A stretch of DNA of 64,000 nucleotides, from positions 67,349 through 131,348 of the forward strand of contig CDMY01000296.1 in the NCBI GenBank assembly GCA_001179505.1, read 5' to 3'. The position numbers and the translations under genes are program-made. The notes below the pieces were generated by a model, which worked only from the letters and a program-made list of their open reading frames with translations, had not been told where the DNA came from and did not search any database. Numbering within the stretch: position 1 is the first letter of the stretch; the number at the start of each line of letters is the position of its first letter. This stretch comes from Vitrella brassicaformis CCMP3155 (Eukaryota > Protista > Chromerida). Shown one piece after another: positions 31,853 to 37,543 of this stretch.

Positions 31853-34564
31853 CTATGTGGTGGGAGTGGCGTTGGTGCCGCCGCCGCCACCACCCTGGCC
31901 CTTCCCGCCGCCCCGATTGCCGCCGTTGCCGCCACGACCCCCGCCGCGACCAGAACCACGGCCTGCACACAGACAGAGACACCACACACCCACGAGACAA
32001 CAGAGAGTCTTACTATGCGGGAAGAGAGAGGTGCCTCACTCAACTCATTCATTCAGTGCTGTGTGTGCAGTGTACGGGGCTGTTAACATAACAGGTGACC
32101 TTACCTTGTGGTGGGTGTAGGAGCTGTGCGCCCTCCTGCGATGCGGCCATGCTGATGAGCTGCATGCCGTTCATGCCGCCAGAGGGAAGGGCGCCGGCCG
32201 GGGGGCTGGCCGTGTTGGAGGTGGGGTGGATCGACTCGGGGTTCTCCTGGTGGCCAGGATGGTGGTGCGGGTGGGGCGGTGGGGGCCGGTCCCTCTCACG
32301 ACCTTGCCCTGGTGGCCCTTGCTGCTGCCCTGGTGGCCCTTGCTGCTGCTGCTGTTGTTGGGGAATGTTGTCCCTGTCTTGCTGCTGCTTCCAGCCGCCC
32401 CGCCCCCCACCGGCTCCCCTGCCCCCCCGACCACCGCGACCACCTCTATCGGCACCTCGATCGCCGCCTCTATCATCCCGCGGGTTGGCCTGATCGAGCA
32501 AGACAACCATGAGCGGTGGACGAGGGAGGGAGGGTTCGTTCCCTTTGTGGTTTGTCGGGTGTGCGCCTACCTCGTTGTTGGGAGGCCTCTTGCCCCGCCC
32601 TCGCGGCCAGCCGCCGACCTGACGCTCCAACTGCAGCCATGCAGACAGACAGACAGAAATGAAGGGGCGGAGGGGATGGGTGAGTGTGTGTGTGTTGTGT
32701 GTGTTGGTTGTGCGTCGTCTGTTTGTTTGTTCTGTTTTAGCGGACGGACCTCTTCAAAAGACCTGCGGATGTCATCCCGCTCCCTGTCGTGCTTGTCGTA
32801 CTCCTACACACATCATACACACATGGGACACAGACATGCACCTTGGCACTCCTCCCTCCCTCCCTCGCTCTCTCTCCCCTCTCTGACCGACCGGTATGTA
32901 TTCGAAGATGGAGTCGAGAATCAGCACGGCGTCGTCAACGTTCATCCTGAGACCGACCAACATCAAACTCTTCGCATGGTCGTCGACCCTACACACACAC
33001 ACACACACAGACGGACGGACAGACCGGTCAGATCCATCCATCAAGGAATGCACCACTGCACTGCTTAGGTCGCTGTCTCTTTCCCACCCACCGACCAGAC
33101 GTTGCTGAGGTGGGCCTGTTTGGCGACGTCGACGACGTTGCGCGAGTCCCGCTCATAGAGCCAGGCCTCGCTGCCGGGGCCGGCAGGGATCTTGTACTCG
33201 TGGTAGACGTACTCCAACTCCTGACGGGCATCTGAATGAATGCACTCAGCCATCCATCAATCCATGGCACACAAGCAGAGCAGTGAATGGCATATATGGC
33301 ACCTGACGAATGTGATGTGTGGGTGTGGGTGTGTGTGTGTGTGCGCACCGGCAACCTGCTTCTTGGTGTTGCCGAAGATGCGCACGAGGCAGTGGCCGGG
33401 CTGGATGGTCACACTCTCGTCGATGCCCGGGTCGCCGGGGTACAACATCTTCACCTCAACCTGACACACACCACACCACACGCCCCCCCTACTTACTGTG
33501 CCCGAGCCCGTGTGCTGTGCTGTGCTGTGCTGTGCACTGCCTCCCTCACTGACGTCGTAAGTGGTGCAGACGCGTCGTAGGTTCTGCCCCTCCCTGCCGT
33601 AGAGGAAGTATGAGACGAGGCTCTCGTCGACCTGGAAGTCGTCCCTGACGGCGTTGCCGTAGTGCTCCCGTCGCCTGCGGACGTTGGCCATCTTGTTGCC
33701 GCGGATCTCGTGGAACAGCTGGATCTCGCGCTGGTGCTTGAAGTGCACACCGAACAGAGCTATCGCGCGGTGGATGGCCGTCTCCTCACCTGCAGGACAG
33801 GCATTCCAAACACCCCGACGCACGTGCAGGGGTGGGCAGGCTCGTGTGTTGTGTGTCGGGGTGTGTGTGGCTGACTGACCGGTGAGGATGAGGTGCGATG
33901 CGTCGTCGGCCACCTGAACGCGCAGGAGGTTGGTCTGCGATAGCACCTGCTGCAGACAGCCGCTGGAGTCCTCCACGTCCGTGTCCAACCAGGGACGAAC
34001 CTGAACACACACACACACACACACACACACGTGTCCTCTCCCTCCACTGTTTGTGTCTGTGTAGCCGCGCCACTCCCCCGCCCACCCAGACAGACAGACA
34101 GACAGGCAGACAGACAGACTGACCTTGGGGTCTATGTCCAGCTGCCTCTGTTTGATGGTGCTCTGCTCGAGTGTGGGGGCGTTGTTGAGGGGCCGCAGGA
34201 CGTCCTTCTCGAAGATCATGCTCTGGATGGTGCCCTCGAACTCGACAAAGTAGAAGTTGCCCTTGACCTGCGTCACCGTCCCCAGCCGCCAGTGCGACGA
34301 GCTGTTGTCGGTGTAGGAGATGAAGACCTCCACCTTGTCGCCCTTGTGCGGCTCCCAGTCGGCAGGGATGTCCGTCAGGCACGACGGCAGCCGCACGCTC
34401 CGCGCCGGGACGACTGCTGGCTGCATGGCGCCGTCTGGGAAGAGCACCAGGAAGCTGTTGCCGTCGGGCTGGAGGTCCTGAATCTGCGCCACGTACCACC
34501 TGTCGCACCGACCGCCCTCATCGATGTTGCACTCCACTGTCGACCCTGGCACCTCGGTCCTCAT
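31853..34564 (-). CDS. FMR1/FXR-like RNA-binding protein (tandem Agenet/Tudor, KH0, KH1, KH2, RGG boxes)
   Basis: Agenet1 WYVAQIQDL...FLVLF...VPARSVRLP; Agenet2 GDKVEVF...HWRLGTVTQVKGNFYFVEF; KH0 AIHRAIALFGVHFKHQR; KH1 FQVDESLVSYFLYGREGQNLRRV...VRIFGNTKKQV.DARQELEY; KH2 EYKIP...; RGG stretches DRGGRGGRGGRG and GRGSGRGGGRGG. Confidence 0.85.
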
Positions 34565-35011
34565 GCTGTTGCGCTGTTGTGCGATGCGTCCGTGAAGGGG
34601 GATGGCTGCGTGTGCACTGGTATGCGCGCTGATGCCTGATAGGCGCTCCGTCCTCCGAGAAAAGGACTGCAACCACTTCTTCAGGGAGAAGAGAACGCAG
34701 CTATCCTGGGGAGTGCCGCTCTGCTCCGTAAAAGTGTTCTAGCCTTTGACCGTGAGACCAACGTGAGACGAAGCCTGCTCCCCCTTTTCACTGCTGAAGA
34801 ACTCCAGAAAAGCTGCCTGTTCTTTCCAACCCGATGGCGGCATCTGTGAACGACGGAGTAGTAGGTGCAGGAAGCGACAGTCAGCCACGCAAGCGTGTGG
34901 AAAGGAAGCGTGTGCCGGGCACTTTGCGGCGTTTTATTCTTCGATCTGTGTTTGCGTGCAGCCTTTGGTGCGGGTGGAGGGCTCGACGACGACGCACCAC
35001 AGCCCCACCGG

Positions 35012-37543
35012 ATGGGCTGCCAGGAGGAGCTTCAAGAGGAAGCAGCCCCTGATGCAGCCACAGGTGCGTTGAGTGAGTGCAGACTTCACAGCATGGAGGT
35101 TGTGATAGGATTGGTGCTCTCAATGGCTCACTGCAGGCCTCGAGGTGGTGTTCCTGGTGCGCAGAGTGGAACCCAAGGTGGCCCAGGTCCGCAGGATCTC
35201 TGGCGACGGCCAACCTTTGACCATCCGTGGCGTTCCTGACCCCTTCGACCACCGCTTCCGCACAGAAGGGCGCACCATCTGCTGGGCGGTGGCGGTGGCT
35301 GTCGTGGCCCTTTTGTGGCCTTCCTGGCTGTGCCCCTCCCAGCTCTCGTCCCTCCCTGCCTGCGTTGGGTGGTTGGTCAGGGGGGTCCTGGTTCTTGTCG
35401 GCGCCTTCAATCTCGCATATGCGGGCAATGCAGCGAAGAAACTTCTGGCGGCAACGAGTTGGTACCTGGCCACAGGCCACAAAGAGGACATTGTGGTGCC
35501 CAGGACTGTTTTCCACGTCGCCATAGTCGCCGTGTATGCCGTCGACAAGTGGCTATATGCGTGGGAGGCTATCCTTCGTTCCTGGCGCCCATTGGTGTCG
35601 CGGGCTGGGCGGTGGCTGGCTGCTGGGTTGTTGGTCGTGCTGCTGGTTGTCGCCGTCGCTGCCGTCATAGTACTGGGACGACAAGCTATGCCCACATCTA
35701 CGCCCGTATCCCTGTCGGCCAATGAGTCCAGTACCATCCCCTCGCCGGCACCGCCACCCCTCCACGTGCCCCTCAGTGCCACCACTACCAAGGCCCACCA
35801 CAGTGACGAAGCAGCGACCGAACCACCCGAACAAGAATCAACACCCGGGGACGTCCCGGCTGCATCGCAGCCCCCCGCCACTCCCCAGTCCAAGCCGCAG
35901 GCTGACAAAGCTAGCGCCTTGTCCTATTCATGGAAATGGTGCAAGGTGTTATTTTGGAGCACTCTCGTCGTGGTGGCTCTGGTTTGTGGCTTGGAGAAGT
36001 ACGGCTGGCGTCCGCCCGTCGTGATGAGATCTATTCTGCCATTGTTTGTTTCGTCTGGGTGGGCGTTACGGCCGTTGTTTCCGTCTTGGTGTTTGGGACG
36101 CCGACGCAGGAGAGTGTACTCCCCCACAGACCACACAGTCCCCCCACCCAAGCAGCAACTGAGTGGGTCGCCTGGTTCACGGCAACTGGTGCTGTCGTCG
36201 GGTTGGGCCTGGTCGTCCTCGGGACTCTCATACTGGCGCTGCGTTCTGGGCTGCGTGCGTGCGGCTGGCTCCCTGCATTTGACGCATATGTGAAAAGGAC
36301 GCTCGACGAGACCAGGGGGGCGATCCTTCGCAAGCTTGATGATATCCACCGCGTGATGGTTCGCACGCGTGAGGCCATCGCTGACCGAAACGCCCAGGAA
36401 CTCATTCAGGAGGAGGAGGCCGCAAGAGAGCAACAAACACAGCGGGGCCAGCAGAGGGGGAGGACCAATAACAACAGGGGCGGCCGAGCCAACAACCAAG
36501 CGGCCGGACAGAGGAATGCTCGTCAGCAGCAGCAGCAGCAGGAGGAGGGGGGGCAGGCCCAGCGACATGTGGCGGAGGAAGAGGGGGACCGCAGAGTGCA
36601 GCCTGAAGACGAAGGCGGTGGAGCCCATGTGGATCACAGCGAGGCGACCTACAGTGGCGGCTGGCAGCGAGCCGTGTGCCAACGACGCCGCCCCAGAGGC
36701 AGCCAGTCGGTCATTCAGGACCAGCAGCCAAGAGCACAACCACCGCAGGCACAGCATCCAGGCCCGCAGGCACCATCAGGAGCAGCAGCAGCAGCAGCAG
36801 CAGCAGCGCAGCAGGCAGCACGTCCGGCAGCCAGTCGCTCGTCCGTCCCTCGCCCCTCTGCACCTCAGGGCTCTCCTGGTGCCCAGCAGGCGTTGGATGG
36901 GGCAGGAGGGAACGGTGCCGTGAGAAGCGGCCTGCCCCCGATGGTCGCTCCCGTAGGCGTGCCCAGGTATGTACGGGTGTCTGACGGACACGTGCAGTGC
37001 AGTCCTTGCTATGCTGGCGTGAACTAACTTGTTTGGTGCGTGTCGTGTCGTATGACTCTGTCTACAGGGTGAGTGAATGGCTAGGCGGTCTGTTCGGGTA
37101 CGTAAGGCCAGCAGCACACTCACTCACGTACATAATGGATGCATCCAGGTGTGCTGTGCCTCTCTGTGTGTGTGTGTATGTGTGAGCTGTCTTTCCTTCA
37201 TTCCTCGCTTCAGGCCGTCCACCGACACGATCTGCACCGTCTGCCTGGACAACCCAAGGGTCATCAAGTTCATGCCGTGCAGGCATTTCCTGACGTGTGC
37301 CAAGTGCTATGACCAGCTGCAGAAGCACCATGAGGAGGAGAAGGCGCAGGGGCGGCAGCAGAGCGAGAGGCCCGTTTGTCCCGTCTGCCGCAGGTCAGTG
37401 ACTCAGTCAGTCAGCCAACCCTTGACGCGCAACGAGACGCGCGCACTCGTGTGTGGCCTTCCTTCTGCATTGTGTGCAGTGAGATCCACTTTGCTGGGAC
37501 GGAGATGGAGGTCAAGAAATGGGCTGAGATGAAGTTCACCTAG
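35012..37543 (+). CDS. Multi-pass membrane RING-HC E3 ligase-like protein with an internal -1 frame break near 36005-36030
   Basis: TM-rich ORF 35145-36293 overlaps TM/coiled-coil/Gln-rich ORF 35930-37027. The latter splices at 36966 into the RING exon CTVCLDNPRVIKFMPCRHFLTCAKC...CPVCR; final exon ends MKFT*. The start may lie at 34834. Confidence 0.7.

What the first reader, a model, noticed from the sequence alone, without database searches (positions are those of the whole stretch)
31853..34564. Full-architecture Fragile X (FMR1/FXR)-like protein in an alveolate
Seen: colinear similarity to recalled FMRP segments across Agenet1, Agenet2 (GDKVEVF...WRLGTVTQVKGNFYFVEF vs SDEVEVY...WWLAKVRMIKGEFYVIEY), KH0 (AIHRAIALFGVHF vs TSKRAHMLIDMHF), KH1 (GREG loop; IFG...DARQELEY vs IYG...KARSFLEF), KH2 and C-terminal RGG boxes. 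Established: the FMR1 family is usually described as animal-specific. The gene has the same microsatellite-rich introns as its neighbours, so it looks native. Inference: the family may be much older than animals, or was transferred.
Basis: partly seen in the sequence, partly recalled or inferred. Interest (0 to 1): 0.82.

Follow-up and report, generated by a model that had tools for sequence, protein, structure and literature searches.

The report
Fragile X protein homolog in Vitrella
A photosynthetic relative of malaria parasites (Vitrella brassicaformis) carries and transcribes a native gene for a true relative of the human fragile X protein FMRP, and related genes in other protists indicate this RNA-binding family is much older than animals and nervous systems.

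Summary
Confirmed. Window 34564→31853 (minus strand) is a 10-exon gene. It encodes the public 583-aa Vitrella brassicaformis protein P0001, annotated only as "Agenet-like domain-containing".

- **Expression:** intron-less contigs in two runs show the gene is transcribed and spliced as modelled.
- **Sequence:** P0001 alone matches only FXR1, FXR2 and FMRP in the PDB (E 5e-8). It aligns with an animal FMR1/FXR profile over 360 columns (hhalign 99.3%, E 1e-20).
- **Profile test:** a 58-sequence profile with no animal proteins hits FMRP Agenet1-Agenet2-KH0 (6e-28) and KH1-KH2 (2.8e-24).
- **Phylogeny:** the gene sits in a chromerid clade inside an alveolate group, and animals plus choanoflagellates form a separate clade. 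Transfer from animals is therefore rejected.
- **Range:** relatives also occur in a rhizarian and a haptophyte, and some intron positions are shared.

Differences from animal FMRP: the KH2 GXXG loop is lost, there is no KH2 variable loop, the methyl-lysine pocket is not conserved, and the C-terminus is a different RGG/Q-P-rich tail.

The likely role is a cytoplasmic mRNA-binding translational regulator (inferred). The paper searches turned up no report of non-animal members. One automatic Perkinsus cluster name ("Fmr1-b protein") hints at database-level recognition. The scan had noted this same stretch twice, in this genome only.

The parts
31853..34564 (-). Whole coding span of the FMR1/FXR-like gene. 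Ten exons: 34124-34564, 33880-34000, 33554-33789, 33349-33460, 33096-33231, 32892-32988, 32750-32803, 32571-32630, 32105-32489, 31856-31962. Stop codon TAG at 31853-31855.
   Evidence: Every residue of public protein P0001 threads through these exons with GT..AG introns. Intron-less contigs in runs X1 and X2 skip the same intervals, while X3 and X4 contigs are colinear with the genome.
34565..34716 (-). 5' untranslated region, at least this long. It contains no upstream ATG.
   Evidence: Transcript-type contig X1 record 3 covers 34325-34716. Sequence read.
34385..34543 (-). Agenet (Tudor-like) domain 1, residues ~8-60.
34187..34348 (-). Agenet domain 2, residues ~73-126.
   Evidence: Pfam Agenet E 6.6e-10. 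Alignments and structure.
33656..34162 (-). KH0 domain (KH fold without a GXXG loop) plus a long connecting helix, residues ~135-232. Interrupted by introns 1 and 2.
33212..33655 (-). KH1 domain, residues ~233-310, with GXXG loop GREG. G296 sits at the Gly of the conserved IYG motif that closes KH1 (the human G266 position by my recollection). Interrupted by introns 3 and 4.
   Evidence: Pfam KH_1 E 2.8e-4, 21.0 bits against a 21.5 cut-off. Alignment A3. Superposition on 2qnd.
32940..33211 (-). KH2 domain, residues ~311-365. The fold is kept but the GXXG loop is replaced by ERDS. The animal variable-loop insertion is absent. Interrupted by intron 5.
32619..32939 (-). Long helix / coiled coil after KH2, residues ~366-403. 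Aligns with the start of the animal C-terminal core. Includes the phase-0 intron after residue 381, which is shared with the Saccoglossus FXR1-like gene.
   Evidence: AF2 helix 363-403. hhalign runs to animal residue 389-391. Intron mapping.
32391..32615 (-). RG/RGG box 1, residues 405-452.
   Evidence: Motif count and composition. Sequence.
32109..32390 (-). Q/P/H-rich low-complexity spacer, residues 453-546. Includes a 21-nt tandem repeat at 32305-32349.
31856..32108 (-). RG/RGG box 2 and C-terminus, residues 547-583. Interrupted by intron 9.
   Evidence: The spliced joint 31961/32104 is seen in X1 and X2.

Best explanation
This is a native, transcribed gene of the chromerid alga Vitrella brassicaformis. 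It encodes a genuine member of the FMR1/FXR (fragile X-related) protein family. It descends from a gene already present in the common ancestor of myzozoan alveolates: apicomplexan relatives, chromerids, syndinians and dinoflagellates. It is homologous over its whole structured region to animal FMRP, FXR1 and FXR2. Shown here: the gene model, its splicing, the homology, the fold, and its place in the family tree. Inferred: like its animal relatives, the protein is a cytoplasmic mRNA-binding protein that assembles messenger RNPs and tunes their translation. It probably contacts RNA through KH1 (intact GREG loop) and the two C-terminal RGG boxes. KH2, like KH0, has probably become a structural or protein-binding module because its GXXG loop is gone. 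The tandem Agenet module probably mediates protein contacts rather than FXR-type methyl-lysine reading, because two of the four pocket residues differ.
For: - Gene model: public protein P0001 maps residue for residue onto 10 GT..AG exons.
- Splicing: contigs in runs X1 and X2 lack exactly these introns, while X3 and X4 hold the unspliced DNA.
- Direct similarity: the only significant PDB sequence hits are FXR1 5e-8, FXR2 1.2e-5 and FMRP 9.5e-5.
- P0001 alone against a 9-sequence animal FMR1/FXR profile: hhalign 99.3%, E 1.1e-20, 360 columns, residues 18-403 against 17-389.
- Non-animal 58-sequence profile against the animal profile: 100%, E 4e-49, 372 columns in one colinear block.
- The same non-animal profile against the PDB: FMRP Agenet1-2+KH0 6e-28 and FMRP KH1-KH2 2.8e-24. 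The best unrelated KH protein scores 1.4e-13 over a single KH, and the best plant Agenet reader 7.5e-4.
- AF2 model: pLDDT 92.7.
- Foldseek: the top six hits are all the FMRP N-terminal domain, E 5e-13.
- IQ-TREE: chromerid clade 97/92, holozoan clade 97/95, alveolate half separated at 100/99.
- Intron positions with identical phase: four shared with the Vitrella paralog, two with Amoebophrya, one with the Saccoglossus FXR1-like gene.
- RGG tracts.
Against: - Pfam's FMRP-specific models (KH_9, Tudor_FRX1, FXMRP1_C_core) give no hit on this protein, and KH_1 scores just under its cut-off.
- KH2 lacks GXXG.
- The Agenet2 pocket residues named for FXR1 in PMC2970552 map to V, R, F, M instead of V, W, Y, E in the HMMER alignment.
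- Sequence identity to animal proteins is only about 21%.
- No functional data exist, so RNA binding, localisation and any effect on translation are inferred from family membership.
- AlphaFold was trained on the PDB, which contains the FMRP structures, so the structural match is not fully independent of the sequence evidence.
Confidence: 0.9

Rival explanations
1. The family is native to holozoans (animals and choanoflagellates). It reached alveolates, rhizarians and haptophytes through one or more ancient eukaryote-to-eukaryote transfers, rather than by descent from an early eukaryotic ancestor. Under this reading the Vitrella gene is still a true family member, inherited vertically within Myzozoa after the transfer.
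For: The gene tree does not match the species tree. Plasmodiophora (Rhizaria) and a haptophyte group with holozoans rather than with alveolates (100/99 for the split, 92/84 for Plasmodiophora plus unnamed sequences plus Holozoa). Both Plasmodiophora introns coincide in position and phase with Saccoglossus introns. The named distribution is patchy: none of the 30 hits whose names I looked up came from a fungus or a land plant.
Against: The alveolate half is deep and diverse and follows alveolate relationships: Digyalum, chromerids, Amoebophrya, Oxyrrhis and core dinoflagellates. Its branch to the other half is long, so any transfer would have to be very old. The tree is unrooted, and fast evolution in alveolates could also produce this topology. 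Only 30 of 150 listed hits could be named, so absences are not established.
Confidence: 0.15
2. Recent horizontal transfer from an animal into Vitrella, or animal contamination of the assembly.
For: The family was previously known only from animals (PMC4216185).
Against: Animals plus choanoflagellates form one clade (97/95) that excludes the Vitrella protein. Identity to animal proteins is only about 21%. The gene lies on a 131-kb Vitrella contig and has the short microsatellite-bearing introns typical of this genome. A second Vitrella paralog shares four intron positions, and a Chromera ortholog exists.
Confidence: 0.01
3. Convergent architecture: an unrelated protein that independently combined two Agenet domains, several KH domains and an RGG tail.
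Against: A single gap-poor alignment covers all domains and the linkers between them. The KH0 domain, whose dedicated Pfam model (KH_9) hit only holozoan proteins among those tested here, is present in the right place. The KH1-KH2 rigid-body arrangement matches FMRP at rmsd 2.1 A, while other tandem-KH proteins do not. FMR-family PDB hits beat other KH or Agenet proteins by more than 10 orders of magnitude. One intron position is shared with an animal gene.
Confidence: 0.02

Closest known systems
Animal FMR1/FXR family (human FMRP, FXR1, FXR2; Drosophila dFMR1; Saccoglossus FXR1-like P0143/P0152)
   Different: About 21% identity. The KH2 GXXG loop is replaced by ERDS. There is no KH2 variable-loop insertion. 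Pfam FXMRP1_C_core, KH_9 and Tudor_FRX1 do not match. Pocket residues of Agenet2 are changed. The tail has two RGG tracts separated by a Q/P/H-rich spacer. The leucine-rich export-signal pattern that I recall for FMRP in the post-KH2 helix is not evident (from memory, untested).
Other alveolate members: second Vitrella paralog CEM18671.1 (P0002), Chromera velia Cvel_18060 (P0014), Amoebophrya (P0005), Oxyrrhis (P0008), Yihiella (P0011), Digyalum (P0029)
   Same: 29-34% identity over the whole structured region. Forms a clade with P0002 and Chromera (97/92). Shares four intron positions with P0002 and two with Amoebophrya.
   Different: Chromera (GDRG) and Amoebophrya (GKKG) keep the KH2 GXXG loop. 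Both Vitrella paralogs have lost it. Tail lengths and compositions differ.
Plant tandem-Agenet chromatin readers (ADCP1/AGDP1, AGDP3; PDB 6ie4, 5zwz, 7yta)
   Different: The match stops at residue ~133, before KH0. Sequence match is 7.5e-4 against 6e-28 for FMRP. By my knowledge these proteins have no KH domains or RGG tail and read H3K9me2 on chromatin.
Multi-KH RNA-binding proteins (IGF2BP1-3, FUBP1/2, PCBP, Nova, vigilin)
   Same: KH type I fold. The profile hits a single KH at 1e-13 or weaker.
   Different: The tandem arrangement does not superpose (rmsd 10-19 A for two-domain fits). Their matches cover the KH region only (profile positions ~216-307); by my knowledge they have no Agenet domains or KH0.

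Membership tests
FMR1/FXR (fragile X-related) protein family | N-terminal tandem Agenet/Tudor domains | tested here: met
FMR1/FXR (fragile X-related) protein family | KH0 domain (KH fold without GXXG) fused directly after Agenet2 | tested here: met
   The non-animal profile aligns through FMRP residues 130-212. The model superposes on 196/199 residues of 4ova, including KH0. Caveat: the Pfam KH_9 model does not hit this protein, although it hits the choanoflagellate member at 1.3e-9.
FMR1/FXR (fragile X-related) protein family | KH1-KH2 tandem in the FMRP-type rigid arrangement | tested here: met
FMR1/FXR (fragile X-related) protein family | Functional GXXG RNA-binding loops in both KH1 and KH2 | tested here: not met
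   KH1 has GREG. KH2 has ERDS where animals have GKNG (alignment A3). This is a lineage-specific loss: Chromera and Amoebophrya keep the KH2 GXXG. It qualifies the mechanism, not the homology.
FMR1/FXR (fragile X-related) protein family | C-terminal RGG box in a disordered tail | tested here: met
   Two RG/RGG tracts at residues 405-452 and 547-583. The last 179 residues contain 50 Gly and 19 Arg. G-quadruplex binding is not testable here.
FMR1/FXR (fragile X-related) protein family | Conserved C-terminal core (Pfam FXMRP1_C_core) | tested here: not met
   No Pfam hit. Only the first helix after KH2 aligns, to animal residue ~390.
FMR1/FXR (fragile X-related) protein family | Significant colinear whole-length homology, with family members as best hits | tested here: met
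   hhalign 99.3%, E 1.1e-20 for the single sequence. 100%, E 4e-49 profile against profile. phmmer hits animal representatives at 1e-8 to 1e-10 in 1.84 billion proteins.
FMR1/FXR (fragile X-related) protein family | Methyl-lysine pocket of Agenet2 (FXR1 V66, W, Y95, E104 as listed in PMC2970552) | tested here: inconclusive
   By the HMMER alignment these map to V, R, F, M in P0001, so two of four are kept or conservative.
FMR1/FXR (fragile X-related) protein family | Association with polysomes or mRNPs and regulation of translation | not testable with these tools
   Needs polysome profiling, CLIP or localisation in Vitrella, Chromera or another alveolate.
Plant Agenet chromatin readers (ADCP1/AGDP) | Agenet arrays without KH domains; H3K9me2 reading | tested here: not met
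   Three KH folds follow the Agenet pair. Sequence match to 5zwz is only 7.5e-4.

The most novel reading that the evidence does not exclude
The complete FMR1/FXR architecture (Agenet x2, KH0, KH1, KH2, RGG) was already present in a unicellular ancestor shared by alveolates, rhizarians, haptophytes and holozoans, that is, close to the last common ancestor of eukaryotes. It was then lost repeatedly, for example in fungi and land plants. The 'neuronal' fragile X protein would then be an ancient general mRNP and translation regulator. It would have diversified into many paralogs in dinoflagellates, which rely heavily on translational control. No publication describing this turned up in the searches I could run.
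Probability: 0.5. Interest if true: 0.72.

Novelty: new member of a known kind. Interest (0 to 1): 0.64.

Why it matters
Reviews of the fragile X field state that the gene arose with the first nervous systems, in the cnidarian-bilaterian ancestor (PMC4216185). This gene shows otherwise. Full-length members exist in chromerids, syndinians, dinoflagellates, an apicomplexan relative, a rhizarian, a haptophyte and choanoflagellates. Together they show that the whole structured core, including KH0, long predates neurons and animals.

This changes how the ancestral function of FMRP should be framed: as general mRNP and translation control rather than synaptic regulation. It offers unicellular systems in which to study that core function. 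It identifies the positions conserved across this deep range, including the one whose mutation causes disease (R138) and the Gly of the KH1 IYG motif (human G266 by my recollection). It also provides natural variants, such as the KH2 loop loss and the absent variable loop, that test which modules are essential. For alveolate biology it adds a candidate translational regulator in lineages where post-transcriptional control is dominant.

Tried and rejected
- **Single-sequence AlphaFold** of residues 1-415 gave pLDDT 40 and was unusable. Only the MSA-based model was used.
- **Pfam FMRP-specific models** do not hit P0001, so membership had to be tested with custom profiles.
- **The word-indexed protein search** found only the protein itself or a handful of relatives. 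The exhaustive HMMER search was needed.
- **Circularity check:** the first family profile (A2) may have contained holozoan sequences. I rebuilt it from 58 sequences on the alveolate side of the tree only (A4) and repeated the PDB and hhalign tests.
- **Saccoglossus isoform X2** is not on record as a gene. Isoform X1 was used for intron mapping.
- **Ten literature searches** for non-animal FMR1 homologs found nothing relevant.
- **Rejected readings:** animal-to-alga transfer or contamination, convergent domain assembly, a plant-type Agenet chromatin reader, and a generic multi-KH protein. Reasons are given under rivals and the membership test.
- I did not build or submit a joined spliced sequence of my own. 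All searches on the full protein used the public database entry P0001, whose residues I verified against the exons.

Full report
**What is in the sequence.** The finding's coordinates are exactly a coding span on the minus strand, from ATG 34564 to TAG 31855-31853. One long reading frame (33257-34672) runs through three in-frame introns. Searching it against the large protein collection returned one protein, P0001. This is 583 aa, from Vitrella brassicaformis CCMP3155, on a 131-kb contig, annotated only as "Agenet-like domain-containing protein". Threading P0001 through the window places every residue on ten exons separated by nine GT..AG introns of 81-142 nt. The full protein was always handled as the database entry P0001. 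The introns carry (AC)n, (TG)n and (CAGA)n microsatellites, as do neighbouring genes.

**Expression.** Two runs of one study (X1, X2; labelled RNA only as a guess) hold contigs that skip the modelled introns. Four joints are listed explicitly: 31961/32104, 32488/32570, 32630/32750 and 33787/33878. All have CT..AC ends on the plus strand, which is GT..AG on the gene strand. The pieces of a 1,337-nt contig show the remaining exon blocks. Two other runs (X3, X4) hold the colinear genomic form. An intron-less copy alongside unspliced DNA is what a spliced transcript gives, so the gene model is supported and the gene is transcribed. Contigs cannot give expression level.

**Direct similarity.**
- phmmer of P0001 against all PDB sequences gives six significant hits. 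All are tandem Tudor/Agenet or N-terminal domains of FXR1 (5e-8), FXR2 (1.2e-5) and FMRP (about 1e-4). The next hit is at E 0.23.
- Pfam finds Agenet (6.6e-10) and KH_1 just under its cut-off (21.0 against 21.5 bits, residues 249-310). It does not find the FMRP-specific models KH_9, Tudor_FRX1 or FXMRP1_C_core.
- An exhaustive phmmer of residues 1-415 against 1.84 billion representatives finds 216 proteins at E ≤ 1e-3 and 110 at ≤ 1e-10. Most align colinearly from about residue 20 to about 410.
- Name look-ups identify a second Vitrella paralog, Chromera velia, two Amoebophrya species, Oxyrrhis, the dinoflagellate Yihiella, the apicomplexan relative Digyalum, Plasmodiophora (Rhizaria), the haptophyte Scyphosphaera and the choanoflagellate Salpingoeca helianthica. 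Animal proteins named FXR1-like (Saccoglossus) and FXR2 (a frog) are also among the hits.

**Non-circular profile tests.** Because a family profile could contain animal sequences, I built profile A4 from 58 sequences on the alveolate side of the tree only. I built a separate animal profile A5 from nine FMR1/FXR representatives.
- hhalign of A4 against A5 gives probability 100%, E 4e-49. It is one block of 372 columns, from P0001 residue 6 to 405 against animal residues 9-391.
- P0001 alone against A5 gives 99.3%, E 1.1e-20, 360 columns.
- A4 against the PDB hits FMRP Agenet1-Agenet2-KH0 (4qvz, residues 5-212) at 6e-28 and FMRP KH1-KH2 (2qnd) at 2.8e-24.
- The best unrelated KH protein (IGF2BP3) is at 1.4e-13 over a single KH. 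The best plant Agenet reader is at 7.5e-4.

**Structure.** With A4 as the alignment, AlphaFold2 gives mean pLDDT 92.7 and pTM 0.71. The model shows two β-barrels, a KH-like module, a 43-residue helix, two KH modules and a 41-residue terminal helix.
- The top six Foldseek hits are all the FMRP N-terminal domain, with E from 5e-13 and TM by target about 0.70.
- Caveat: AlphaFold has seen the FMRP structures in training.

**Origin.** A careful IQ-TREE of 42 members gives the following:
- a chromerid clade (this protein, its paralog and Chromera; 97/92);
- that clade lies inside a group holding Digyalum, Amoebophrya, Oxyrrhis and dinoflagellates;
- animals plus choanoflagellates form one clade (97/95);
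- the alveolate half is split from the rest at 100/99.

Transfer from an animal, or contamination, is therefore rejected.

Intron mapping gives these shared positions with identical phase:
- four with the Vitrella paralog;
- two with Amoebophrya. By simple arithmetic on about 1,170 aligned nucleotide positions, chance is about 1e-3;
- one with the Saccoglossus FXR1-like gene, phase 0 at the KH2/coiled-coil junction. Chance is about 6%, so this is only suggestive.

Both introns of the Plasmodiophora gene coincide with Saccoglossus introns (chance about 1e-4). These estimates assume uniform intron placement, which is optimistic.

The deep history is not settled. Plasmodiophora and the haptophyte group with holozoans rather than with alveolates. 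This fits neither a simple vertical history nor a simple transfer, and the tree is unrooted.

**Differences from animal FMRP.**
- KH1 keeps a GXXG loop (GREG). KH2 has ERDS in place of GKNG. The paralog has also lost it, while Chromera and Amoebophrya keep it.
- The animal insertion in KH2 is absent in all protist members shown.
- The residues that PMC2970552 lists for the FXR1 Agenet2 pocket map to V, R, F, M in P0001. The paper's numbering is partly ambiguous.
- The tail has two RG/RGG tracts separated by a Q/P/H-rich spacer and no FXMRP1_C_core match.
- The residue at the R138Q site is conserved as R149 in P0001, and the Gly of the IYG motif closing KH1 (G296) is nearly invariant across the family. 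That this Gly is the human G266E site is from my memory of human numbering.

**Mechanism (inferred).** By homology the protein is most likely a cytoplasmic mRNA-binding regulator of translation or mRNP assembly. It would use KH1 and the RGG boxes for RNA. KH0 and the degenerate KH2 would act as scaffolds, and the Agenet pair as a protein-interaction module. None of this is tested.

**Novelty.**
- Ten full-text searches found no paper describing non-animal members. Subscription literature is not covered.
- At database level there is a hint. The nearest ESM Atlas cluster, mostly Perkinsozoa where the phylum is known, carries the automatic name "Fmr1-b protein". Pfam KH_9 already hits the choanoflagellate protein.
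- The protein is thus a new, unrecognised member of a known family. The interesting part is the family's age and range.
- The scan's earlier notes on this stretch are the same DNA read twice and had not been followed up.

Noticed in passing
L001:2001-3959 (Vitrella contig CDMY01000506.1): A second Vitrella FMR1-like paralog (P0002, CEM18671.1, 511 aa, annotated 'K Homology domain-containing'). It shares four intron positions and phases with the window gene and has also lost the KH2 GXXG loop (LNQQGVS).
   Followed up: partly
L004:1001-2552 (Plasmodiophora brassicae) against L002:1001-19973 (Saccoglossus kowalevskii): Both introns of the Plasmodiophora FMR1-like gene coincide in alignment column and phase (0) with introns of the Saccoglossus FXR1-like gene. 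In the tree the rhizarian protein groups with holozoans rather than with alveolates. This means either conserved ancient introns or an old holozoan-to-rhizarian transfer.
   Followed up: partly
one search hit list (P0003-P0150): Most of the 216 hits are transcript-sized contigs from marine metatranscriptomes, MMETSP or EukProt. They fall into many distinct alveolate-side clades, which suggests a large paralog expansion of the family in dinoflagellates. Only 30 were named.
   Followed up: partly
P0024 (2448 aa): A very long protein that matches the Agenet2 region of the query in 25 separate stretches: an Agenet-repeat array of unknown origin.
   Followed up: no
window:30190-30213: An interstitial telomere-like repeat, CCCTAA x3.7, between genes.
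   Followed up: no
window:36400-36900: A GC-rich stretch with strong AT skew and CAG repeats (36524-36541 x6, 36777-36820 x14.7). It is probably a low-complexity (polyQ, polyA or polyS) coding segment of the neighbouring gene. It gave weak tblastn matches to the Q/G-rich tail of P0001 through composition only.
   Followed up: no
ESM Atlas cluster 'Fmr1-b protein': The nearest Atlas cluster (54 members, Perkinsozoa commonest where the phylum is known) carries an automatic FMR1-type name. At least one source annotation has therefore already labelled a Perkinsus homolog as Fmr1-like.
   Followed up: no
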